Assembly: GCF_032444005.1 (NCBI RefSeq)
Contig: NC_091282.1
Location: forward strand, 735,816,001-735,880,000
DNA: 64,000 nucleotides
Direction: 5' to 3'
Origin: Ranitomeya imitator
Lineage: Eukaryota
Shown here: positions 16,461-49,321 of the stretch, piece after piece
Layout: every line of letters starts with the position of its first letter
How positions within the stretch are numbered: the stretch's first letter is position 1
Made by a program: the position numbers and the translations under genes
Notes under the pieces: model-generated
Seen by the model: only the letters and a program-made list of their open reading frames with translations
Database searches by the model: none
What the model was told of the DNA's origin: nothing

Positions 16461-18019
16461 ATTCCAACATGTTTCTAGGTCAAACAGACCTTTGAATATA
16501 GTGATTCCCATGAGGAAGAGGTCCATTCAACCTAGAAATATGTTAGGAATAACCTACAATCTATTTCTATTCTTCTGAATCCTGTGAATTATTATCCAGC
16601 AGCACAACACACCCGCATTTCTCCCTTTGGTACATACTGAGGGATGCAGAGACACTTGTACAGGTGGGCTGTTTTCCTGCAAGTTTTCTATTTCATTCCA
16701 GTGCTGGCTTCACATCTACCCTGCTCAATACTGTTGTATGTATAGTTATGGGATGCAGATCTTGAACAGATTTACTGCATCACTCCATTTACTTCAGTGA
16801 AGCTCTAATATAAGAGGCGGCTCAGTGTGAACAGGGATTATATGTTGAGGTTTCCAGATATCAGAAAACTAGCTTGGTCGACTGCTATCTCTCCTGGCCC
16901 ACACTCTGTTTGACTGGATGTACATGTGCTTCCAATGGGGAGAGTGGAATAAAATGCTTCTAGACAGAGGCTAATCTCCCACATACAGTAGAATTGTAAT
17001 CTAACATGCCCCATCTGGGTACACTAATCGGTCATGGTACACAATGAAAGCACCAGATGGGCAATGTTGTTACTCTACAAGTGTAGAGCATAGCTAGGTT
17101 TATTCAGTGCATTTATCAGGGGTTGTCTTTCTAGAAATATGTAATGTTACAGGTCTATGTGTACGTGATGGTGTTTAGCCATGCCGAGGGTGCACTGAGC
17201 CCCATAATTTGCATTAAATGTAAAAGAGGAAAATAATTGTACCTGTTAGATCTGAAGTATTATCTGACATGAAAAATAGTAGTGAGTAATAGAAAACCCC
17301 ATTACATGGAAAATCAAGGCTTTTATTTCCATCTCATACATAAGTCATATCCATAGGAGATTTATATTGTAGGTATATGGTGGTCCTGTGCGAAAGATTG
17401 GGTGTACAAAAAGGTTGGATGCACGCCATTAGACTAAAACTATTAACATATTTGAAGTGCCAAATATCTCAATATTTCTATATCTACAGGATATTACATA
17501 AATGCGGATCCCACTGACTGACCTGCAGCTATTCCGAGAACCGGTCAGTGGAGAGGTGGTTGGAATTTCCATGCAAATTAATGAGATTCAGACCACCTCT
17601 CCATTGGCAGTAGTGGGCAATCGGGCTCCGTTCTCACAATAAACGTGGGTGCCATGTGCTGTGGATATGCCATAAATGTACAAGATGGAAATAACCCCTT
17701 TCAACAGATCTGACACTATCACTAGTGGACACAATGTACAATAAAAAGATCTTTGAGTCCATGGCTTCAAAAATTACCAGACTCATACCTCGTTGTTACC
17801 ATCAGTTTCTTCTGAATGGTTTTCAACTTTTCTAAAAACTATATCCACTCTGATCAAAGTAACATTTTTGAGAAACCAGCTAGAAGATGTTTTATGATGC
17901 TAATGATGTTGGAAAAGGTTACAAAACCATGTCTCAAAAGTGTGGCCTCCATCAGTCCATTGTCAGCCAAATAGCTTCCAGATGTCATGTTTTACCCACG
18001 AGATTGCTTTATGCTTAAA

Positions 18020-38024: not shown

Positions 38025-39049
38025 CTGAGGCGTACAGCAGGTTTCTGAGCAGGCTGACCTCAGGTCAGATTTATTAACGTGAAAGCAACACAAAAAACAA
38101 AACATAAAAATAAACCCTAGCCTGTCCGGCACTAACTAAACAAATACGTTGCTATCTCAACAACTGGGGGGGCTTCTCCCACCCAGCTAACATCATACAG
38201 ATCTTGAGCAGAGCTCTTCACTCACGTTTGTCTCACACAGGCAGGCAATCTGTGTGCCCCAGGCAGACACTGGAAACACCCAGCTGGTCATCTTTTATTC
38301 CTGCAATCATTAACCCATTAGCACCCTGAAGATACTGAGTGGCCTAATTCACATAGGACAAACACCTGGGTGAGATATACCTGCCTCCATCTACCACACC
38401 AGCATGAGTCTTACACCTTGCTTGTGAACTGTGAGATACCTCTGTGACTTACAGGAGTATTCCCATCACCAAGATCCTACCCCAATATGTAGTAGATGCA
38501 ATAATAATATTAGCAAATACCTTCAAATAGAAATGTAGTATAGTTTTTTGATCCACTAAGTCTCTTTCCTCATGTGCAGGCGTTGGGTATACATGGTTAC
38601 GACCACTGATATAGCGACAGGTGTTAGTGGATATAACCATGGATACCTAAGGTCCTGCAATACCTGCACATGAAGAAAGAGGTATAGGGAATCGGAAAAA
38701 CTATACTAAATTTCTAATTGTGCCAAAAGGAGAGCAATTCAGAGCAATGATTTATAAAACAAACTTTAATTGTCATAAATAATACAAAAACATATATCAA
38801 AATATTACACTATCTAATGACTAGAGCACAGGATGAATGTCCCAGGAATGCTGGAAAAGCGCCCATCCCCCCGCTCCCCCAGATGTAAATACCCTTGTAA
38901 TGGTATGCATAAGAAAAAGCACCTACACTATCCAACCAAAGTCACCCCAAAGCAGTGGGACTCTATAGTAATGCCATTAAGTATGGTGGTGGAAAAAGGG
39001 TGCTAGCACTTACCACTACACAGAGGTAGGGGGGGCGGTCAGGCGATGG

Positions 39050-39096
39050 TCCCCAACGCACGTTTCGTGGCCACCAGTGCCACTTCCTCAGGGGGA
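39050..39096 (-). ncRNA. Type-I hammerhead ribozyme (pLTR copy 1)
   Basis: Reverse complement of 43213-43259. Confidence 0.8.
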
Positions 39097-40039
39097 TAAC
39101 CATGTACTGCCTAACGGGACCTTAAAATAGCCCTTGGCCCCGGTCACATGGTACACAGCAGCCAATCACAGTGGCGCCATCGGCACATGTGCATTGTGTC
39201 CGGCAAGTCCCAGCAGTGGAAATCAGCGTCAGACCAGGTGCGCACGCCCAGGACAAAGAAAAAAAAAAAAAAAGGTCCGGAGCGCACACACCGAGCCCTA
39301 AGACGCCGGTCCACACAGGGACAGGACGAATCACAGCGCAATGCGCACGGCCACTGGTGAGGGAAAATACTAAAAGTGCACAATATAAGTATAAAAGCTA
39401 CTCCCTCCACATCCACTACTCATAGCTGCTACCAATACAGGACAATTGGGGACCCATCAAAAATACAGCTCACAATAAAAACCGGTAAATGAACAAGTAT
39501 ACAAAGTGGAACTAAACCGTTTTCTATACATCGGCATCACATTATAGTGGAAAAAGTGCATCGCTTCAGTTTAACAGTCTTCATAGTAAGAATATTTGTC
39601 CCATTCTCTCTGAAGCAGATGTCTTGATGAGTCCACTTTGCCCCGGTTTGGATGGTATCCACGCTGGTTACTTAAATGGAGCCAAGGACATATTCAAAAG
39701 GCATACCTTAAGGCCACGGATCAATTATTATCACTAATAATGTAAATAAACCAGAGGTTAAAATCACAAACACAAACATAAAAACAAATGCTAAAACCAA
39801 AAAATCCCGAACCATACAGGGGTTAAGGACGCCCAGGGCTGGAAGGGTCATATATTTAAATACAAAAGGAGGCAGAGGATGACACCTTGGCACACACACA
39901 AATAAGCAATAAATAATAAGGAGTACAAAGGGTACCAGGGATTCCCAGCCAGTCTCCCATGCTGGTCCCTGCCTAGCCTAAAGCTGCTTAGCATTCTGAC
40001 GAGGGCAGGCACATTCTGCTTAGTGTGGCCGTTAAGTAC

Positions 40040-42931
40040 TCATAAGTAGGGAGCAAAGCTCAGAGCCTCATTCAGACCCGCTGGTGACATAGTACCAAGT
40101 CTAACTATCCACCTAGTTTCCTTTTGTGCTAGAAGTTTTTTATTGTCCCCACCCCGAATACCCAAGTGCAAGGCATCAATACCCCTCACCTTTAATAGAT
40201 TTGCATTGCACTTATGGTGCCGCAAAAAATGTCGTGGAATGGGTTTCAGATCTGACGTGTCGGTCACTGTCTTGGCAGCACCAATGTCCCGGACATGCTC
40301 ACGGACACGGACTCTCAGCTCCCGTGTGGTAAGACCTATGTAAATCATGGGACACGGGCATGTCGCATAGTAGATTATATTGGTTGTGCCGCATGAAATC
40401 CGTTCCCTGATGTCAAATTCTCTCGTTCCATCAGTAGAAGTGAAACTAGAGCATCGTAGGACATTGGTGCAGGCAAGACAGTGACCGCAGGGGAAACACC
40501 CCAAAGTGGGGCCCCTCGAACCAAATGGGTTACTCGGACTGGGGACATAGTGGCTACGCACCAGCAGGTCATTCAAATTTTTGCATCTCCTAGAGGTCAT
40601 CTGAGGGTATGGGCCAAGGGAGGCCGCCAGAGAGGGCTCAGCCCCAAGAACTGACCAGTGCTTGGCAAGGATGGAGCGCATCCCATTCCACTCATGATTG
40701 TACGTAGAAATAAAGCGAATGGTGCCAGCCCCATCCCTGCCAATCTGCCGGTCACGTGGATGCAGTAGAGTCTCACGTGGGGTCTTTCTGGCACGATCAT
40801 AACCATGTTTTATGGATCGCCGGCTATACCCCCGAGCCAAAAATCGGTCCCTGAGATCAGAGGCCTGTGCCTCAAACTTTGACTCAGAGGAACAGATTCG
40901 CCGCATCCTCAGGAATTGTCCGATCGGGACGGCCCTAACCGTGGACGGATCATGTGCCGATGAGGCATGCAACAGTGCGTTAACAGAGGTCGACTTCCTG
41001 AAGACATCCGCCTGGATGCGACGATGGTTGTCGATCTCAAGACGGACGTCCAGAAAGTCGACCGCGACCTCACTGTAAACATGCGTAAGTTTAATATTAA
41101 GAGTGTTGTTATTCACAGCACCCATAAAGTCCTGGAGCTGCTGGACAGTCCCATCCCACAAAAAAAGAATATCATCAATGAAGCGATACCAGCACAGCAC
41201 ATGGGACGCGGCCGGTGGGCCCTCGTCGCCAAAAAGGAATCTCTCCCAATAACCAAGGAAGAGATTAGCATACGAAGGCGCACAGGCCGCGCCCATGGCT
41301 GTGCCGCGCTTCTGTAAATAAAAAACGTCTTTAAAGACGAAAAAATTATGTGTGAGAACAAAGTCCAGCAGCTCAAGTACCAATCCACGTACAGGGCCGC
41401 CCAGATCGGAAGTCCCGAGGAAGAAGCGAACCGCCTCCAACCCACAAGAGTGTTCTATACAAGTATACAACCCTTCAACGTCAGCAGTGACGAGAAGGGT
41501 TGCTTTGTCCACAAGGATGCCGTCAACCCGCGCTAGGACATCCGTGGTGTCACGAATATAAGAAGGTAATGTCTGGACTAGTGGCTTCAGATAGAAATCA
41601 ATAAATTGACACACACGGTCACATAAACCCCCAATCCCAGACACAATCGGACGTCCCGGGGGGTTGAGGGCATCCTTGTGGACTTTGGGCAACAAATAAA
41701 AAGTAGGAGTTCTGGGGGATCTGACCATCAAACCATCGAAGACCTTTTTGGGGATAATACCCCCCTCAAAAGCTCCAAATAGAACCTGCTCTAACTCCCG
41801 CAGGTATATCACCATCGGATTGGAGGACAACCTAATGTAGGTGTCAGAGTTCCGGAGCTGGCGAAATGCCTCACGCTCATATTTATCACTTGGCCAGACC
41901 ACAATGTTCCCCCCCTTGTCCGCAGGCTTGAATACAACATCCCGCAATGATTGAAGCTGCCCGATAGCCTGCCGTTGTTTAGCGGTTAAGTTATCATAAG
42001 TACGCCTAGTAGACAGTTTTTTGAAATCCTCACTAACCAATCTAGTGAATACTTCGATTGCCGGGCTTAAGGACAAGGGGGGGAACCTTGTGGACCTGGG
42101 CAGGATAGAAGACGGAAAACTACTTACATTAGGACACTCCTGTTCCTCCAATAAGTCCTCCAAATCACGAAGTGCTTGTGCTTCAACTGCACTCATGGAC
42201 TCTGATGTAGGATCCCTTCCATGCAGTTTTCTCAAAATCAATTTGCGGGAAAAGAGATGCAGGTCCTTTAGGGCTGTAAAATAGTCAAATGAATTTGTTG
42301 GAGAGAAAGTCAGACCCCTACTCAGAACATCCAACTGAGACTCAGTAAGTGCATGTGATGATAAGTTCAATACCTGGAGTCCACCCTGGCGACCACCCCG
42401 GGCCGTAGTTCCCCCAGCTCCCTTATTCCTGGTGTGTTGCCTGGTAGTCATCCTCTTATTGCCGGACTCAGACATTGAAACCTGTTCAGACTGAGAAGTG
42501 CTGGACCTGGCATCTTCCTCATGGTTGGATCTGCCAGAAAATGCTGAAGTGGATCTCGACCGGGAATAAGACATGTTCCTCGACCTTGGTCGAGAACGAC
42601 CCCATGGGTTCCGCCATCTATATACTCTAGACTGCTGTTTGTCCAGAATATCACGGTTAAATTTTTTTGTTTTAGTTGTTTGAATGTCATGGGCCCACTT
42701 CTGCAAGTCGGCATCAATTTCTTCATTTAGTTTTTTTAGGGCATCACTTGACATATCCTTCTGCAGGCACACCTGTAACTCATCAATCTCCTTCTCAATT
42801 ACTTCCAGAGATTCATGGTTCAACCGTTTAAGCAGAACCATGAACCCAAATGGGTCCCCAATTGTCCTGTATTGGTAGCAGCTATGAGTAGTGGATGTGG
42901 AGGGAGTAGCTTTTATACTTATATTGTGCAC
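40040..42931 (-). CDS. Uninterrupted 963-aa PLE polyprotein (RT + Cys linker + GIY-YIG endonuclease) with a chimeric N-terminus
   Basis: KPADKGG, GTAMGAACAPSYANLF, YRFIDD, CFPCGHCLAC and IIYYATCPCPMIYIGLT motifs. The first ~28 aa are read from antisense pLTR sequence across the 42848-49 junction. Confidence 0.9.
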   Translation of the reverse strand: MHNISIKATPSTSTTHSCYQYRTIGDPFGFMVLLKRLNHESLEVIEKEIDELQVCLQKDMSSDALKKLNEEIDADLQKWAHDIQTTKTKKFNRDILDKQQSRVYRWRNPWGRSRPRSRNMSYSRSRSTSAFSGRSNHEEDARSSTSQSEQVSMSESGNKRMTTRQHTRNKGAGGTTARGGRQGGLQVLNLSSHALTESQLDVLSRGLTFSPTNSFDYFTALKDLHLFSRKLILRKLHGRDPTSESMSAVEAQALRDLEDLLEEQECPNVSSFPSSILPRSTRFPPLSLSPAIEVFTRLVSEDFKKLSTRRTYDNLTAKQRQAIGQLQSLRDVVFKPADKGGNIVVWPSDKYEREAFRQLRNSDTYIRLSSNPMVIYLRELEQVLFGAFEGGIIPKKVFDGLMVRSPRTPTFYLLPKVHKDALNPPGRPIVSGIGGLCDRVCQFIDFYLKPLVQTLPSYIRDTTDVLARVDGILVDKATLLVTADVEGLYTCIEHSCGLEAVRFFLGTSDLGGPVRGLVLELLDFVLTHNFFVFKDVFYLQKRGTAMGAACAPSYANLFLGYWERFLFGDEGPPAASHVLCWYRFIDDILFLWDGTVQQLQDFMGAVNNNTLNIKLTHVYSEVAVDFLDVRLEIDNHRRIQADVFRKSTSVNALLHASSAHDPSTVRAVPIGQFLRMRRICSSESKFEAQASDLRDRFLARGYSRRSIKHGYDRARKTPRETLLHPRDRQIGRDGAGTIRFISTYNHEWNGMRSILAKHWSVLGAEPSLAASLGPYPQMTSRRCKNLNDLLVRSHYVPSPSNPFGSRGPTLGCFPCGHCLACTNVLRCSSFTSTDGTREFDIRERISCGTTNIIYYATCPCPMIYIGLTTRELRVRVREHVRDIGAAKTVTDTSDLKPIPRHFLRHHKCNANLLKVRGIDALHLGIRGGDNKKLLAQKETRWIVRLGTMSPAGLNEALSFAPYL

Positions 42932-43212
42932 TTTTAGTATTTTCCCTCACCAGTGGCCGTGCGCATTGCGCTGTGATTCGTCCTGTCCCTGTGTGGACCG
43001 GCGTCTTAGGGCTCGGTGTGTGCGCTCCGGACTTTTTTTTTTTTTTTTTTCTTTGTCCTGGGCGTGCGCACCTGGTCTGACGCTGATTTCCACTGCTGGG
43101 ACTTGCCGGACACAATGCACATGTGCCGATGGCGCCACTGTGATTGGCTGCTGTGTACCATGTGACCGGGGCCAAGGGCTATTTTAAGGTCCTATTAGGC
43201 AGTACATGGTTA

Positions 43213-43259
43213 TCCCCCTGAGGAAGTGGCACTGGTGGCCACGAAACGTGCGTTGGGGA
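43213..43259 (+). ncRNA. Type-I hammerhead ribozyme (pLTR copy 2)
   Basis: TCCCC-CTGAGGA-A-GTGGC(actggtg)GCCAC-GAAA-CGTGCG-TT-GGGGA: stem I TCCCC/GGGGA, stem II GTGGC/GCCAC, minimal stem III, GUU triplet ending at 43254. Confidence 0.8.
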
Positions 43260-43295
43260 CCATCGCCTGACCGCCCCCCCTACCTCTGTGTAGTG

Positions 43296-43724
43296 GTAAG
43301 TGCTAGCACCCTTTTTCCACCACCATACTTAATGGCATTACTATAGAGTCCCACTGCTTTGGGGTGACTTTGGTTGGATAGTGTAGGTGCTTTTTCTTAT
43401 GCATACCATTACAAGGGTATTTACATCTGGGGGAGCGGGGGGATGGGCGCTTTTCCAGCATTCCTGGGACATTCATCCTGTGCTCTAGTCATTAGATAGT
43501 GTAATATTTTGATATATGTTTTTGTATTATTTATGACAATTAAAGTTTGTTTTATAAATCATTGCTCTGAATTGCTCTCCTTTTGGCATGGTTTGTTTTG
43601 AGCTGATTTGGTGAGGTCGGGGTCTTTTGGCGTATTTACTGCCAGACCCCGTGCGCTCACAATATGTATTTGGGAGTTTTGTATTCAATATTCTCTGTGT
43701 TTTTCACAGCTTTCCCATTCTTAG
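43296..43724 (+). other. Predicted spliceosomal intron in the PLE 5' leader
   Basis: G|GTAAGT donor at 43296. Pyrimidine tract and TTAG acceptor at 43724 (alternative CAG at 43709), immediately followed by GC-ATG-G (MDFRAL). Confidence 0.6.
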
Positions 43725-43726
43725 GC

Positions 43727-46700
43727 ATGGACTTCCGTGCGCTTGACTGCACCTGGCGAGCACAGATTAATGATGTCTGTCTTGACAATGCTGACGGGGT
43801 GGTTGAGGGGTCCTCCAAAGAGTTGCAGGAGGTGGTACATCGTTTTAAGGAACTTTTACGTAAGAGGACTCGGACATGGTGGAACCATGAGTTCCTGGAT
43901 ATGTATATCCAGAAGGACCTTATCCCACGTGGGCTTCGTATCCAAGTGTTTCCGTCATTCCCTATCTTGGATGACAAGTTTAAAAATGATTGGGAGGAAT
44001 TGACTAATACCTGCTCCAGGGGGTTCATGGTTCTGCTTAAACGGTTGAACCATGAATCTCTGGAAGTAATTGAGAAGGAGATTGATGAGTTACAGGTGTG
44101 CCTGCAGAAGGATATGTCAAGTGATGCCCTAAAAAAACTAAATGAAGAAATTGATGCCGACTTGCAGAAGTGGGCCCATGACATTCAAACAACTAAAACA
44201 AAAAAATTTAACCGTGATATTCTGGACAAACAGCAGTCTAGAGTATATAGATGGCGGAACCCATGGGGTCGTTCTCGACCAAGGTCGAGGAACATGTCTT
44301 ATTCCCGGTCGAGATCCACTTCAGCATTTTCTGGCAGATCCAACCATGAGGAAGATGCCAGGTCCAGCACTTCTCAGTCTGAACAGGTTTCAATGTCTGA
44401 GTCCGGCAATAAGAGGATGACTACCAGGCAACACACCAGGAATAAGGGAGCTGGGGGAACTACGGCCCGGGGTGGTCGCCAGGGTGGACTCCAGGTATTG
44501 AACTTATCATCACATGCACTTACTGAGTCTCAGTTGGATGTTCTGAGTAGGGGTCTGACTTTCTCTCCAACAAATTCATTTGACTATTTTACAGCCCTAA
44601 AGGACCTGCATCTCTTTTCCCGCAAATTGATTTTGAGAAAACTGCATGGAAGGGATCCTACATCAGAGTCCATGAGTGCAGTTGAAGCACAAGCACTTCG
44701 TGATTTGGAGGACTTATTGGAGGAACAGGAGTGTCCTAATGTAAGTAGTTTTCCGTCTTCTATCCTGCCCAGGTCCACAAGGTTCCCCCCTTGTCCTTAA
44801 GCCCGGCAATCGAAGTATTCACTAGATTGGTTAGTGAGGATTTCAAAAAACTGTCTACTAGGCGTACTTATGATAACTTAACCGCTAAACAACGGCAGGC
44901 TATCGGGCAGCTTCAATCATTGCGGGATGTTGTATTCAAGCCTGCGGACAAGGGGGGGAACATTGTGGTCTGGCCAAGTGATAAATATGAGCGTGAGGCA
45001 TTTCGCCAGCTCCGGAACTCTGACACCTACATTAGGTTGTCCTCCAATCCGATGGTGATATACCTGCGGGAGTTAGAGCAGGTTCTATTTGGAGCTTTTG
45101 AGGGGGGTATTATCCCCAAAAAGGTCTTCGATGGTTTGATGGTCAGATCCCCCAGAACTCCTACTTTTTATTTGTTGCCCAAAGTCCACAAGGATGCCCT
45201 CAACCCCCCGGGACGTCCGATTGTGTCTGGGATTGGGGGTTTATGTGACCGTGTGTGTCAATTTATTGATTTCTATCTGAAGCCCCTAGTCCAGACATTA
45301 CCTTCTTATATTCGTGACACCACGGATGTCCTAGCGCGGGTTGACGGCATCCTTGTGGACAAAGCAACCCTTCTCGTCACTGCTGACGTTGAAGGGTTGT
45401 ATACTTGTATAGAACACTCTTGTGGGTTGGAGGCGGTTCGCTTCTTCCTCGGGACTTCCGATCTGGGCGGCCCTGTACGTGGATTGGTACTTGAGCTGCT
45501 GGACTTTGTTCTCACACATAATTTTTTCGTCTTTAAAGACGTTTTTTATTTACAGAAGCGCGGCACAGCCATGGGCGCGGCCTGTGCGCCTTCGTATGCT
45601 AATCTCTTCCTTGGTTATTGGGAGAGATTCCTTTTTGGCGACGAGGGCCCACCGGCCGCGTCCCATGTGCTGTGCTGGTATCGCTTCATTGATGATATTC
45701 TTTTTTTGTGGGATGGGACTGTCCAGCAGCTCCAGGACTTTATGGGTGCTGTGAATAACAACACTCTTAATATTAAACTTACGCATGTTTACAGTGAGGT
45801 CGCGGTCGACTTTCTGGACGTCCGTCTTGAGATCGACAACCATCGTCGCATCCAGGCGGATGTCTTCAGGAAGTCGACCTCTGTTAACGCACTGTTGCAT
45901 GCCTCATCGGCACATGATCCGTCCACGGTTAGGGCCGTCCCGATCGGACAATTCCTGAGGATGCGGCGAATCTGTTCCTCTGAGTCAAAGTTTGAGGCAC
46001 AGGCCTCTGATCTCAGGGACCGATTTTTGGCTCGGGGGTATAGCCGGCGATCCATAAAACATGGTTATGATCGTGCCAGAAAGACCCCACGTGAGACTCT
46101 ACTGCATCCACGTGACCGGCAGATTGGCAGGGATGGGGCTGGCACCATTCGCTTTATTTCTACGTACAATCATGAGTGGAATGGGATGCGCTCCATCCTT
46201 GCCAAGCACTGGTCAGTTCTTGGGGCTGAGCCCTCTCTGGCGGCCTCCCTTGGCCCATACCCTCAGATGACCTCTAGGAGATGCAAAAATTTGAATGACC
46301 TGCTGGTGCGTAGCCACTATGTCCCCAGTCCGAGTAACCCATTTGGTTCGAGGGGCCCCACTTTGGGGTGTTTCCCCTGCGGTCACTGTCTTGCCTGCAC
46401 CAATGTCCTACGATGCTCTAGTTTCACTTCTACTGATGGAACGAGAGAATTTGACATCAGGGAACGGATTTCATGCGGCACAACCAATATAATCTACTAT
46501 GCGACATGCCCGTGTCCCATGATTTACATAGGTCTTACCACACGGGAGCTGAGAGTCCGTGTCCGTGAGCATGTCCGGGACATTGGTGCTGCCAAGACAG
46601 TGTCCGACACGTCAGATCTGAAACCCATTCCACGACATTTTTTGCGGCACCATAAGTGCAATGCAAATCTATTAAAGGTGAGGGGTATTGATGCCTTGCA

Positions 46701-46827
46701 CTTGGGTATTCGGGGTGGGGACAATAAAAAACTTCTAGCACAAAAGGAAACTAGGTGGATAGTTAGACTTGGTACTATGTCACCAGCGGGTCTGAATGAG
46801 GCTCTGAGCTTTGCTCCCTACTTATGA
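43727..46827 (+). CDS. Full-length PLE ORF (~1030 aa) broken by one 1-bp homopolymer frameshift at 44785-44790
   Basis: ORFs 43664-44800 and 44791-46827 join if C6 is read as C7, as in the inverted copy (G7 at 42077-42083). N-terminal IPRGLR motif, RT and GIY-YIG. Confidence 0.9.
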
Positions 46828-47777
46828 GTACTTAACGGCCACACTAAGCAGAATGTGCCTGCCCTCGTCAGAATGCTAAGCAGCTTTAGGCTAGGCAGGG
46901 ACCAGCATGGGAGACTGGCTGGGAATCCCTGGTACCCTTTGTACTCCTTATTATTTATTCCTTATTTGTGTGTGTGCCAAGGTGTCATCCTCTGCCTCCT
47001 TTTGTATTTAAATATATGACCCTTCCAGCCCTGGGCGTCCTTAACCCCTGTATGGTTCGGGATTTTTTGGTTTTAGCATTTGTTTTTATGTTTGTGTTTG
47101 TGATTTTAACCTCTGGTTTATTTACATTATTAGTGATAATAATTGATCCGTGGCCTTAAGGTATGCCTTTTGAATATGTCCTTGGCTCCATTTAAGTAAC
47201 CAGCGTGGATACCATCCAAACCGGGGCAAAGTGGACTCATCAAGACATCTGCTTCAGAGAGAATGGGACAAATATTCTTACTATGAAGACTGTTAAACTG
47301 AAGCGATGCACTTTTTCCACTATAATGTGATGCCGATGTATAGAAAACGGTTTAGTTCCACTTTGTATACTTGTTCATTTACCGGTTTTTATTGTGAGCT
47401 GTATTTTTGATGGGTCCCCAATTGTCCTGTATTGGTAGCAGCTATGAGTAGTGGATGTGGAGGGAGTAGCTTTTATACTTATATTGTGCACTTTTAGTAT
47501 TTTCCCTCACCAGTGGCCGTGCGCATTGCGCTGTGATTCGTCCTGTCCCTGTGTGGACCGGCGTCTTAGGGCTCGGTGTGTGCGCTCCGGACCTTTTTTT
47601 TTTTTTTTTTTTTTTCTTTGTCCTGGGCGTGCGCACCTGGTCTGACGCTGATTTCCACTGCTGGGACTTGCCGGACACAATGCACATGTGCCGATGGCGC
47701 CACTGTGATTGGCTGCTGTGTACCATGTGACCGGGGCCAAGGGCTATTTTAAGGTCCTGTTAGGCAGTACATGGTTA

Positions 47778-47824
47778 TCCCCCTGAGGAAGTGGCACTGG
47801 TGGCCACGAAACGTGCGTTGGGGA
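47778..47824 (+). ncRNA. Type-I hammerhead ribozyme (pLTR copy 3)
   Basis: Identical to 43213-43259. Confidence 0.8.
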
Positions 47825-48430
47825 CCATCGCCTGACCGCCCCCGCTACCTCTGTGTAGTGGTAAGTGCTAGCACCCTTTTTCCACCACCATACTTAATGG
47901 CATTACTATAGAGTCCCACTGCTTTGGGGTGACTTTGGTTGGATAGTGTAGGTGCTTTTTCTTATGCATACCATTACAAGGGTATTTACATCTGGGGGAG
48001 CGGGGGGATGGGCGCTTTTCCAGCATTCCTGGGACATTCATCCTGTGCTCTAGTCATTAGATAGTGTAATATTTTGATATATATTTTTTTGTATTATTTA
48101 TGACAATTAAAGTTTGTTTTATAAATCATTGCTCTGAATTGCTCTCCTTTTGGCATGGTTTGTTTTGAGCTGATTTGGTGAGGTCGGGGTCTTTTGGCGT
48201 ATTTACTGCCAGACCCCGTGCGCTCACAATATGTATTTGGGAGTTTTGTATTAAATTTCTAATTGGAGGTATTTGCTAAAATTATTATTACACCTACTAC
48301 ATATTGGGATAGGATCTTGCCATTGGGAATACATTTTTTAATGCTGGATGCAGTTTTGTAAGATGGAATCCTGTGTAATATGGAGCAGCAGGAGGAGGCT
48401 AGAAACAGCCAAATGTTTTCTTAAATAGTA

Positions 48431-48907
48431 AATTATGCAAATTGTCTCTTCAGAGAGGAAGAGAGCTAGAACTCTAGTGCCACCTATTGGAAGGTAGCAA
48501 TCCTACAAGTCAATGTCGACCCTTTAACGAGCCTTGTCACATGACTTAGGATAATAACCAAACCAGAATCTCAAATAATCCCACCTTCCAATAGGTGGCA
48601 CTAGAGTTCTAGCTCTCTTCCTCTCTGAAGAGACAATTTGCATAATTAGTATATTACCCAGAGGAGCATTGCGGCTTTAAGTCTCCTCATCTCGGCATGC
48701 TTAGCATGTCGATCTCCGCAAGGAGAAACGATACTTCTTGGATAACGATCTGAAGCCTCTCACACAGCCAAACCAGATCTCCACTTTGCACTGACGAGGG
48801 GCAGTACCCCGAAACACAGTGGCTGCAAATTGAGATTCTGGTTTGGCTATTATCCTAAGTCATGTGACAAGGCTCATTAAAGGGTCGACATTGACTTGTA
48901 GGATTGC
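48431..48907. mobile_element. Retrozyme-like non-autonomous PLE derivative (~325-nt unit 48583-48907 plus inverted piece 48431-48574)
   Basis: A-B-A'-M-B' inverted-repeat layout with a hammerhead motif in M. Confidence 0.7.
48785..48829 (+). ncRNA. Type-I hammerhead motif with a mutated cleavage triplet
   Basis: TTTGCA-CTGACGA-GGGG(cagta)CCCC-GAAA-CACAGTG-GC-TGCAAA. The triplet reads GGC rather than GUC. Confidence 0.7.
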
Positions 48908-49321
48908 GAAACGCGCGTCGGGTGTGGTGGGTCCTTCGTTTGCTCCTCCATAGGTAACTATGCCTTATTCACATTATCTGCGATGTATATGTTAGCTGCT
49001 TAAACATCTATTGTTCGCCCTCACTATGACCAAATAGTGTTGTTTTACTAAATTAACTATTTATATTGGTATAATTATAATTATCATATTGCACATTTGC
49101 ACTATTCTCACTATTTGCATATGTGGGGCGATTTTTCTATGCAGCTGGTTATTGAGTATACAGTGGGGCAAAAAAGTATTTAGTCAGTCAGCAATAGTGC
49201 AAGTTCCACCACTTAAAAAGATGAGAGGCGTCTGTAATTTACATCATAGGTAGACCTCAACTATGGAAGACAAACTGAGAAAAAAAAATCCAGAAAATCA
49301 CATTGTCTTTTTTTTAACATT

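What the first reader, a model, noticed from the sequence alone, without database searches (positions are those of the whole stretch)
39050..47824. Three identical non-canonical type-I hammerhead ribozymes in the PLE pseudo-LTRs
Seen: a 47-nt motif at 39050-39096(-), 43213-43259(+) and 47778-47824(+). It has a CUGAGGA core plus one extra A, a 5-bp stem II, GAAA, a minimal stem III (ACG-UG-CGU) and a GUU triplet. Established: minimal type-I hammerheads occur in PLE pLTRs and are reported to cleave as dimers. Inference: the two + strand copies, 4565 nt apart, would excise a unit-length RNA containing the whole ORF, which could circularise. The third copy would cut the antisense strand.
Basis: partly seen in the sequence, partly recalled or inferred. 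Interest (0 to 1): 0.8.

Follow-up and report, generated by a model that had tools for sequence, protein, structure and literature searches.

The report
Hammerhead ribozymes in a frog Penelope retroelement
The three identical 47-base motifs are real copies of the small self-cutting "hammerhead" RNA that Penelope-like jumping genes are already known to carry in their flanking repeats, so this is a clean new example of a known thing; whether the cut RNA forms a circle remains untested.

Summary
Observation confirmed. The same 47-nt motif lies at 39050-39096(-), 43213-43259(+) and 47778-47824(+). A structural descriptor finds only these three sites in the window and none in 100 shuffles.

It is a minimal type-I hammerhead with a complete catalytic core. 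It has one unpaired A after A9, a G10.1-C11.1 pair, a 5-bp helix II, and a self-complementary 8-nt helix III that can only form between two copies.

These are the published hallmarks of hammerheads in Penelope-like element (PLE) pseudo-LTRs (Cervera & De la Pena 2014), so "non-canonical" is wrong for this family. Rfam Hammerhead_1 matches full-length but below its threshold (22.4 vs 34 bits).

The host element is a frog PLE with an RT and GIY-YIG ORF. It forms a 1.18-unit tandem on the + strand joined head-to-head to a 5'-truncated inverted copy.

A model built from the motif finds counterparts in two PLE-encoding contigs whose proteins are 50% and 41% identical. 11 of 17 pairs show compensatory changes. 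All lie 36-46 nt after a TATA box.

The circular-RNA idea has the right geometry (4565 nt) but is a published, still untested hypothesis. Two contig boundaries at the predicted cut site are suggestive only.

This is a new member of a known kind, of low to moderate interest. First-stage notes of this scan also report two hammerhead-bearing inserts elsewhere in this genome.

The parts
43213..43259 (+). Minimal type-I hammerhead in the upstream pseudo-LTR. Helix I pairs 43213-43217 with 43255-43259, extended by 43206-43209 with 43260-43263 across a UUA bulge. Predicted cut after U43254.
   Evidence: (Rfam Hammerhead_1 22.4 bits, full model 1-45)
47778..47824 (+). Identical hammerhead in the downstream pseudo-LTR. 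Predicted cut after U47819.
39050..39096 (-). Identical hammerhead in the pseudo-LTR of the inverted 5'-truncated copy. Predicted cut between 39055 and 39054 on the - strand.
42850..43688 (+). Upstream pseudo-LTR of the + copy (the 3' part of a preceding unit). It contains a T run at 43025-43052, promoter-like boxes and the hammerhead. Element 3' termini fall at about 43588 and about 43686.
   Evidence: (different flanks follow 43685-43688 in X1, X5, X11 and 43589 in X5)
47410..48252 (+). Downstream pseudo-LTR of the + copy, 99% identical to 42850-43688.
38721..39457 (-). Pseudo-LTR of the inverted copy. It ends at the shorter 3' terminus (equivalent to 43588).
   Evidence: (I3, I6)
43143..43187 (+). 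Promoter-like CCAAT box (inverted, ATTGG at 43143-43147) and TATA-like box (TATTTTAA at 43180-43187), 75 and 38 nt upstream of core base C3.
   Evidence: The same order and spacing occur in L001, L003 and L007 (TATA 36-46 nt from C3).
43296..43709 (+). Putative 5'-UTR intron (GTAAGT donor, pyrimidine-rich tract ending in cacag as acceptor). It spans the pseudo-LTR/body boundary and an ATTAAA signal. No splice joint was seen in the contigs.
   Evidence: sequence; no joint; organisation reported for Penelope and Chlamys-3 in PMC8557442
43727..46827 (+). PLE ORF of the + copy, starting at the conserved MDFRA start. [quoted passage not shown] The frame is interrupted at the C run at about 44786-44791.
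40040..42847 (-). Same ORF in the inverted copy. The frame is open but the copy is 5'-truncated (it begins at the equivalent of 44021). The open frame runs on across the junction to 42931.

Best explanation
The three motifs are copies of one genuine Penelope-like-element hammerhead ribozyme of the known minimal type-I, dimer-dependent class. They sit in the pseudo-LTRs of a recently inserted frog PLE, which consists of a 1.18-unit + copy joined head-to-head to a 5'-truncated inverted copy.

Shown here: the catalytic core is complete, and helices I and II are formed. Helix III is an 8-nt self-complementary string that can pair only between two copies. The same structure, with different sequence, is kept in distantly related PLEs at the same place, 36-46 nt downstream of a TATA box.

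Inferred: Pol II starts in the pseudo-LTR a few bases before helix I. The ribozyme would then be the first structure of the PLE transcript, and it recurs about 1 kb after the stop codon. When two copies pair, probably helped by the PLE protein as shown for the Anolis element, each RNA is cut after U43254 or U47819. This removes the short capped leader and/or separates tandem units.

Cleavage is probably inefficient and not obligatory for retrotransposition.
For: Core and helices were read directly. Rfam Hammerhead_1 aligns over the full model with every core base matched. The descriptor gives 3 hits against 0 in 100 shuffles. The minimum-energy homodimer is the classical double hammerhead, with an intermolecular helix III and both cores unpaired.

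The host is a PLE. The ORF has an RT, a weak GIY-YIG Pfam match and the GIY-YIG motifs, and it has hundreds of frog homologues, some of which sources name GIY-YIG or RT proteins. The partial tandem, the inverted truncated copy and the two alternative 3' ends match the typical PLE layout in PMC8557442.

A covariance model built only from the window motif finds L001:4464-4515 (31 bits, E 9e-8) and L007:2751-2809 (19 bits, E 6e-4). Both lie downstream of PLE ORFs whose proteins are 50% and 41% identical to this one. In the resulting alignment all 48 cells pair and 11 of 17 pairs change on both sides. None of 500 shuffles reaches this, and slid controls pair 36-48%.

The TATA-to-C3 distance is 38, 36, 36 and 46 nt in the four loci. 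The features match PMC4209133 point by point. Two contig boundaries fall exactly at the predicted cut site (43254): X6, with depth 67 downstream against 0-6 upstream, and X5, where 98 foreign letters are joined there.
Against: Rfam's curated threshold is not reached (22.4 < 34 bits), and the match disappears in larger searches. Neither the monomer fold (z = +0.9) nor the dimerisation energy (63 of 200 shuffles do as well) is exceptional.

The covariation rests on three distinct sequences in an alignment fitted to the model. No raw RNA reads were available, so no RNA end is shown. Contigs of X1 and X11 run through the site unbroken.

Published PLE hammerheads cleave poorly in vitro (PMC4209133). 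For the Anolis element, cleavage needed protein, was dispensable for insertion in vitro, and left no ends in RNA-seq (PMC11167929). The TSS is predicted from box spacing only.
Confidence: 0.8

Rival explanations
1. Circular-template model. Both + strand ribozymes cut, and the 4565-nt RNA with 5'-OH and 2',3'-cyclic phosphate ends is ligated into a circle. That circle serves as a rolling template for more-than-unit-length cDNA.
For: The spacing is exactly one unit and the two cuts flank the ORF. The + insertion is 1.18 units long and begins about 355 nt upstream of the predicted TSS of its own upstream pseudo-LTR. A simple TSS-to-end transcript therefore cannot have been its template. The RT start sites lie downstream of the cut, which a circle would accommodate. 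Animal retrozymes related to PLE pseudo-LTRs are thought to use circles.
Against: There is no evidence for a circle here. The circle junction has the same sequence as the tandem, so short reads cannot show it. More-than-unit copies are equally explained by template jumping or by transcripts of longer tandems. In vitro insertion by the Anolis PLE used unprocessed RNA and did not need the ribozyme. PLE clades without hammerheads proliferate well.
Confidence: 0.12
2. The motif is a conserved RNA structure kept mainly for something other than cutting. It could be a binding or recognition site for the PLE protein or a promoter-proximal element. Alternatively the ribozyme merely hitch-hikes on PLEs, and cleavage is incidental or negligible in vivo.
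For: In vitro activity of metazoan PLE hammerheads is low. Cleavage is dispensable for target-primed reverse transcription, and no RNA-seq ends were seen in Anolis. PMC8557442 raises the parasitic-HHR idea. The position next to the TATA box is fixed.
Against: All catalytic core bases are kept in the window, L001 and L007 while the helices change by compensation. That pattern is expected for a ribozyme rather than for a mere hairpin. Contig boundaries fall at the exact cut site.
Confidence: 0.15
3. Chance resemblance to a hammerhead inside a repeat.
For: The Rfam score is below threshold. The three copies are one sequence duplicated.
Against: The descriptor gives 0 hits in 100 shuffles. Structural counterparts with compensatory changes occur at the same place in other PLEs. 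The location is exactly where the family is known to occur.
Confidence: 0.03

Closest known systems
Minimal hammerhead ribozymes of metazoan Penelope-like elements (Cervera & De la Pena 2014, PMC4209133)
   Same: Type-I topology and location in both pseudo-LTRs. One unpaired base between A9 and 10.1, a G10.1-C11.1 pair, a short helix I (5 bp proximal) and a helix II longer than 4 bp. Helix III is self-complementary, which implies a dimeric active form. The paper reports such motifs in amphibians, with about 9,000 in Xenopus tropicalis.
   Different: Helix III here is 8 nt with two central G-U pairs in the dimer, rather than absent or 2-4 nt. Helix I has a second 4-bp segment beyond a UUA bulge. 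The fixed spacing to a TATA box, seen here in four loci, is not discussed in that paper (a search for 'TATA' found nothing and the only 'promoter' is the T7 one).
Hammerhead of the Anolis carolinensis Poseidon element PAc (PMC11167929)
   Same: A vertebrate EN+ PLE with its hammerhead in the pseudo-LTR just upstream of or overlapping the start of the coding region. It also has two alternative reverse-transcription start sites that give an optional 'tail'.
   Different: In PAc the ORF starts inside helix II and the cut is 26 nt after the start codon. Here the conserved start (43727) lies 472 nt after the cut, beyond a putative intron. The optional 3' extension here is about 97 nt, against 30-40 nt.
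Dimeric satellite hammerheads of newts and Schistosoma, and animal non-LTR retrozymes
   Same: Type-I hammerheads with a helix III too weak for monomer activity, acting between tandem copies. Retrozymes are proposed to be non-autonomous derivatives of PLE pseudo-LTRs (bioRxiv 10.64898/2026.07.22.740005).
   Different: Those are short non-coding tandem units (about 150-1000 nt) that accumulate as small circles. Here the unit is a 4.6-kb coding element, and no circle has been shown.
HDV-like ribozymes at the 5' end of R2 and other non-LTR retrotransposons
   Same: A self-cleaving RNA placed at the start of a retroelement transcript to define its 5' end.
   Different: It is a different ribozyme class. 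HDV-like ribozymes cut at their own 5' edge and stay on the element RNA. A type-I hammerhead cuts near its 3' edge, so the core leaves with the short leader.

Membership tests
Hammerhead ribozyme, type I (Rfam RF00163) | Conserved core C3-U4-G5-A6-N7-G8-A9, G12-A13-A14, A15.1-U16.1 and cleavage-site H17 (not G) | tested here: met
   CUGAGGA at 43218-43224, GAA at 43243-43245, A43246 with U43253, and U43254. Read and aligned to the model consensus.
Hammerhead ribozyme, type I (Rfam RF00163) | Three helices around the core, with helix I open (5' and 3' ends in helix I) | tested here: met
   Helix I has 5 + 4 bp and helix II 5 bp. Helix III has 3 bp with a 2-nt loop as a monomer, or 8 bp between two copies.
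Hammerhead ribozyme, type I (Rfam RF00163) | Score at or above Rfam's gathering threshold (34 bits) | tested here: not met
   22.4 bits and E 0.0014 on a 121-nt stretch. Nothing is reported on 11 kb or on the whole window. The shortfall comes mainly from the 18-nt helix II/loop segment (consensus 14 nt), which includes the extra base after A9.
Hammerhead ribozyme, type I (Rfam RF00163) | Site-specific self-cleavage | not testable with these tools
   Only contigs were available. Boundaries at 43254 in X5 and X6 are suggestive.
PLE minimal hammerhead (PMC4209133) | Unpaired nucleotide between A9 and 10.1 | tested here: met
   A43225 here. L001 also has A and L007 has C.
PLE minimal hammerhead (PMC4209133) | G10.1-C11.1 base pair | tested here: met
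   G43226-C43242. L001 has G-C and L007 has G-U (pair 21/42).
PLE minimal hammerhead (PMC4209133) | Palindromic 15.2-16.2 / loop 3, so that helix III forms between two copies | tested here: met
   ACGUGCGU is self-complementary with two G-U pairs. L001 has AUGCGCAU and L007 ACAUGU. The dimer minimum-energy structure forms it.
PLE minimal hammerhead (PMC4209133) | Location in the pseudo-LTRs of a PLE | tested here: met
Penelope-like element, EN+ (canonical) | Single ORF with a reverse transcriptase followed by a C-terminal GIY-YIG endonuclease | tested here: met
   RVT_1 is weak (E 5e-4, below cutoff) and GIY-YIG is weak (E 0.006, below cutoff). The FIDD, IYYATC and IYIGLT motifs are read. There are 1726 homologues at E<=1e-10, many named RT or GIY-YIG domain proteins.
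Penelope-like element, EN+ (canonical) | Partial tandem giving pseudo-LTRs, often with an inverted 5'-truncated copy and an optional 3' tail | tested here: met
   Direct repeats lie 4560-4567 nt apart, and inverted arms are 100% complementary. The two 3' ends are about 97 nt apart. The layout is as described in PMC8557442.

The most novel reading that the evidence does not exclude
The ribozyme cuts in vivo and the cut end is used. The promoter-to-ribozyme spacing, conserved in four PLE lineages, puts the hammerhead at the very start of the transcript. Cleavage would then strip the capped leader of about 45 nt and leave a 5'-OH RNA. RNAs or cDNA copies beginning exactly at the cut site (the boundaries at 43254 in two runs) would be its footprint. 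Such ends could feed ligation into a circle and rolling reverse transcription, which would explain more-than-unit-length insertions like this one. This would be the first in vivo trace of PLE hammerhead cleavage in a vertebrate; a search for one in Anolis found none.
Probability: 0.15. Interest if true: 0.7.

Novelty: new member of a known kind. Interest (0 to 1): 0.25.

Why it matters
On its own this adds only one more well-preserved PLE hammerhead. The class has been catalogued since 2014, with thousands of copies in amphibians.

Its practical value is as a clean test case. The insertion is very young (repeats 99-100% identical), both ribozymes are intact, and it has a recognisable promoter, a putative 5'-UTR intron and two defined 3' ends. 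There are also hints that molecules begin exactly at the predicted cut.

The biological role of PLE hammerheads is still an open question (PMC8557442, PMC11167929). A family like this one would be a good place to test whether cleavage happens in vivo and what the cut RNA is used for, given RNA data from the same species.

Tried and rejected
- **Rfam at larger scale:** no hit at gathering threshold on the whole window or at E<=10 on 11 kb. The sub-threshold match appears only on a 121-nt stretch.
- **Fold energies:** the monomer fold and the homodimer binding energy are no better than shuffles. Energy alone says nothing here.
- **Closest homologues' DNA:** the DNA around the dendrobatid frog homologues could not be fetched, because the files were too large or the protein was not on record. 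I used shorter Logan/ENA contigs instead.
- **Contigs without a motif:** L002, L006, L008 and L009 gave no convincing hammerhead. Their 3' flanks are 0.4-1.7 kb and may not reach the pseudo-LTR.
- **L003:4083-4144:** it has a U3/A8 core variant, the extra A, a 5-bp helix II and an ACGU palindrome after a TATA box. But helix I is poor and the model score is at noise level (10.3 bits, E 0.5-1.3). I count it only as a possible counterpart.
- **Upstream ATG:** I considered that the ATG at 43206 starts the ORF and reads through the ribozyme, as in the Anolis element. I rejected this because homologues start at the MDFRA methionine, which is 43727 here. The 43206 frame is also offset from the main frame across the putative intron in this window's copies.
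- **Intron:** no spliced joint appears in any of the four runs. Coverage of the 5' ORF is nil there, so it remains untested.
- **Second run search:** the search around the cut site sampled only 11 words and was uninformative.
- **Other copies:** no other copy of the element is present in the window, by blastn or tblastn.
- **5S-like segment:** relatives show no such segment, and no paper links 5S to PLEs.


Full report
**1. What is in the sequence**

The 47-nt motif is present and identical at 39050-39096(-), 43213-43259(+) and 47778-47824(+). Its 37-nt core string occurs three times with no mismatch, and none is expected by chance.

Read 5' to 3' on the first + copy, the parts are:
- Helix I, 5' strand: UCCCC, 43213-43217.
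- Core: CUGAGGA, 43218-43224.
- One unpaired A: 43225.
- Helix II: GUGGC paired with GCCAC, 43226-43230 with 43238-43242, around a 7-nt loop.
- GAA: 43243-43245.
- Helix III string: ACGUGCGU, 43246-43253.
- Cleavage-site base: U43254.
- Helix I, 3' strand: GGGGA, 43255-43259.

Helix I can be extended by AUGG/CCAU (43206-43209 with 43260-43263) across a UUA bulge.

The predicted cuts are after 43254 and 47819 on the + strand. On the - strand the cut lies between 39055 and 39054.

A structural descriptor written for this class finds only these three sites in the 64 kb, and none in 100 shuffles.

The three copies are not independent evidence. They lie inside repeats that are 99-100% identical over hundreds to thousands of bases.

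**2. Rfam**

The whole-window search at gathering threshold finds nothing. An 11-kb search at E<=10 also finds no hammerhead.

On 121 nt, Hammerhead_1 (RF00163) aligns over its full length (positions 1-45) with every core position matched. The score is 22.4 bits against a threshold of 34, with E 0.0014.

By Rfam's curated criterion this is therefore not a called member. The alignment shows why: the helix II segment is 18 nt against 14 nt in the consensus, and that segment includes the extra base after A9.

**3. Context**

Repeat analysis and alignments give the architecture.
- The + copy spans 42850-48252. It is 1.18 units of a 4565-nt unit, so 42850-43688 and 47410-48252 form direct pseudo-LTRs.
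- It is joined head-to-head, with 2 nt between, to an inverted copy at 38721-42847.
- The inverted copy is 5'-truncated (it begins at the equivalent of 44021) and is about 100% identical to the + copy.

The ORF has these features:
- It encodes a reverse transcriptase (weak RVT_1 match; FIDD motif).
- It has a C-terminal GIY-YIG endonuclease (weak Pfam match, E 0.006; IYYATC and IYIGLT motifs).
- It has 1726 homologues at E<=1e-10. The best are from dendrobatid and other frogs at up to 69% identity, and several are named RT or GIY-YIG domain proteins.
- Homologues start at a conserved MD[FY][RK]A methionine, which is the ATG at 43727 here.

In the + copy the frame is interrupted by a one-base length difference in a C run at about 44786-44791 relative to the inverted copy. 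The inverted copy's frame is open, but that copy lacks its 5' end.

The overall layout is a partial tandem, an adjacent inverted 5'-truncated copy, an optional 3' tail and a hammerhead in the pseudo-LTR. This is the typical PLE structure described in PMC8557442.

**4. Comparison with the literature**

PMC4209133 describes minimal type-I hammerheads in the pseudo-LTRs of all PLEs examined, and reports about 9,000 such motifs in Xenopus tropicalis. It lists as emergent hallmarks:
- a conserved G10.1-C11.1 pair;
- a palindromic 15.2-16.2 / loop 3.

All three are met here.

The same paper shows low in vitro cleavage that occurs only in dimeric or trimeric constructs. It also already proposes that the cut RNA may be ligated into circles that template more-than-unit cDNA.

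PMC11167929 studied an Anolis PLE. Its hammerhead cut only in the presence of the element's protein and was not needed for insertion in vitro. No RNA-seq reads began or ended at the cut site.

PMC8557442 states that the function of hammerheads in EN+ PLEs is still unclear.

**5. Independent support from relatives**

DNA of the closest genomic homologues could not be fetched. I used Logan and ENA contigs encoding proteins 34-50% identical to this one.

A covariance model built only from the window's motif finds:
- L001:4464-4515 at 31 bits, E 9e-8;
- L007:2751-2809 at 19 bits, E 6e-4.

Both lie downstream of the PLE ORF.

In the model-fitted alignment of the three distinct sequences:
- all 48 pair cells are standard pairs;
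- 11 of 17 pairs change on both sides;
- no shuffle out of 500 reaches this;
- sliding the partners drops pairing to 36-48%.

The caveats are that there are only three sequences and that the alignment is fitted to the structure.

Each relative keeps the unpaired base after A9, a self-complementary helix III (AUGCGCAU, ACAUGU) and a bulged two-part helix I.

A third locus, L003:4083-4144, has a U3/A8 core variant, which PMC4209133 also reports as a covariation. It also has the extra A, a 5-bp helix II and an ACGU palindrome. Its helix I is poor and its score is at noise level, so I treat it as possible only.

**6. Position relative to the promoter**

In the window, a CCAAT box (inverted, at 43143) lies 75 nt upstream of core base C3, and a TATA-like box (43180) lies 38 nt upstream.

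In L001, L003 and L007 a TATA box lies 36, 36 and 46 nt upstream of C3, with a CCAAT or CCAAC box 57-82 nt upstream.

With the usual spacing of about 30 nt from TATA to start site, transcription would begin 6-16 nt before the core, at the 5' strand of helix I. This is inference from box spacing; no start site was mapped.

Downstream of the cut there is a GTAAGT donor at 43296 and a pyrimidine tract ending in cacag at 43709. These outline a putative 414-nt 5'-UTR intron that spans the pseudo-LTR/body boundary. Penelope and Chlamys-3 have this organisation.

No spliced joint was seen, but the runs had no coverage of the 5' ORF at all.

**7. Dimer**

The minimum-energy homodimer of 43206-43268 is the classical double hammerhead.
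- The two ACGUGCGU strings form one intermolecular helix.
- Each helix I forms between the 5' strand of one RNA and the 3' strand of the other.
- Both helix II hairpins are local and both cores are unpaired.

The energy gain (-11 kcal/mol) is not better than for shuffles (63 of 200). This shows compatibility, not proof.

**8. Public runs**

No raw RNA reads were available, only contigs of runs whose RNA status is a guess. They show four things.
- The tandem joint 47409 to 42850 is present in three runs.
- Contigs diverge into different flanks after 43685-43688 (X1, X5, X11) and after 43589 (X5). The inverted copy in the window also ends at the equivalent of 43588. The family therefore has two 3' termini about 97 nt apart, like the two RT start sites and optional tail of PMC11167929.
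- Depth is high on 45792-47190 and on the pseudo-LTR, and close to nil on the 5' ORF, as expected from 5'-truncated copies.
- In X6 a contig of depth 67 starts at 43254, and nothing at 95% likeness or more covers 42973-43253. In X5 a contig joins 98 unrelated letters to the element at 43254.

Both boundaries coincide with the predicted cut to within one base. They may be one and the same locus or RNA in the same species. X1 and X11 run through the site unbroken. I rate this as suggestive only.

**9. What the geometry allows**

The two + ribozymes are exactly one unit apart and flank the ORF, so a doubly-cut RNA would be unit length.

But the element's 3' termini lie 335-432 nt after the cut. 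A linear doubly-cut RNA would therefore carry the reverse-transcription start sites near its 5' end.

This insertion also contains two intact ribozymes and begins about 355 nt upstream of its own predicted TSS. Its template was therefore a more-than-unit RNA that was either uncut or religated.

Rolling reverse transcription on a circle fits this. Template jumping or transcripts of longer tandems fit equally well, and nothing here separates them.

The third ribozyme is the sense-strand motif of the inverted truncated copy and lies outside the + unit.

**10. Verdict**

This is a genuine, structurally conserved PLE hammerhead of the known minimal, dimer-dependent class, in a young frog PLE insertion. 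It is a new member of a known kind.

The circular-RNA reading is a published hypothesis that remains untested here. First-stage notes of this scan also report two hammerhead-bearing inserts elsewhere in this genome.

Noticed in passing
window 46831-46943 (+) and 39924-40036 (-): A 5S rRNA-like segment starts 4 nt after the PLE stop codon in both copies (Rfam 5S_rRNA 33.3 bits against a threshold of 38, E 9e-4, full-length). Contigs of four public runs cross it, so it belongs to the family. It was not found in six related PLE contigs, and no paper links 5S to PLEs. It may be a captured 5S pseudogene or SINE head.
   Followed up: partly
window 48785-48829 (+) and 48905-48920 (+): A hammerhead-like motif with a CUGACGA core and a 4-bp helix II lies just outside the PLE's 3' end. 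It has G instead of U at position 16.1 (Hammerhead_1 14.7 bits, E 0.9). About 90 nt further on is a separate GAAACGCGCGUC half-site. This looks like a rearranged retrozyme-like unit, and another first-stage note covers it.
   Followed up: partly
window 16498-16555 (+): A degenerate counterpart of the same motif (model R1, 15.8 bits, E 0.02). It has AUGAGGA instead of CUGAGGA (C3 replaced by A), the extra A, a helix II and a helix I. It is probably an old, inactive PLE or retrozyme fragment.
   Followed up: no
window 43280-43310 and 43532-43555, as seen in runs X5 and X6: Contigs carry clustered one-direction transitions relative to the window. Four A-to-G changes occur within 29 letters after 43280 in X5, and five T-to-C changes occur at 43532-43555 in X6. 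This could be RNA hyper-editing of double-stranded RNA from the inverted copies, or simply a diverged subfamily.
   Followed up: no
window 48253-48332 (+) and 38457-38540 (-): The DNA flanking the two outer ends of the head-to-head PLE pair is itself an inverted repeat (86% complementary). On the left side it is separated from the PLE end by about 180 nt that include a hairpin (38580-38653, chance-level miRNA match). The target may have been a palindromic element.
   Followed up: partly
window 45792 (+): Contigs of all four runs begin at 45792-45793 and run to about 47126-47250 at much higher depth than the 5' ORF. This suggests a favoured 5' truncation point or an abundant shorter derivative of the family.
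   Followed up: no
window 43273-43279 (+): The C run just after the ribozyme is one base longer in contigs of all four public runs than in the window's copies, so homopolymer length varies between copies. In the window's copies the short frame opened by the ATG at 43206 is offset from the main ORF frame across the putative intron.
   Followed up: partly
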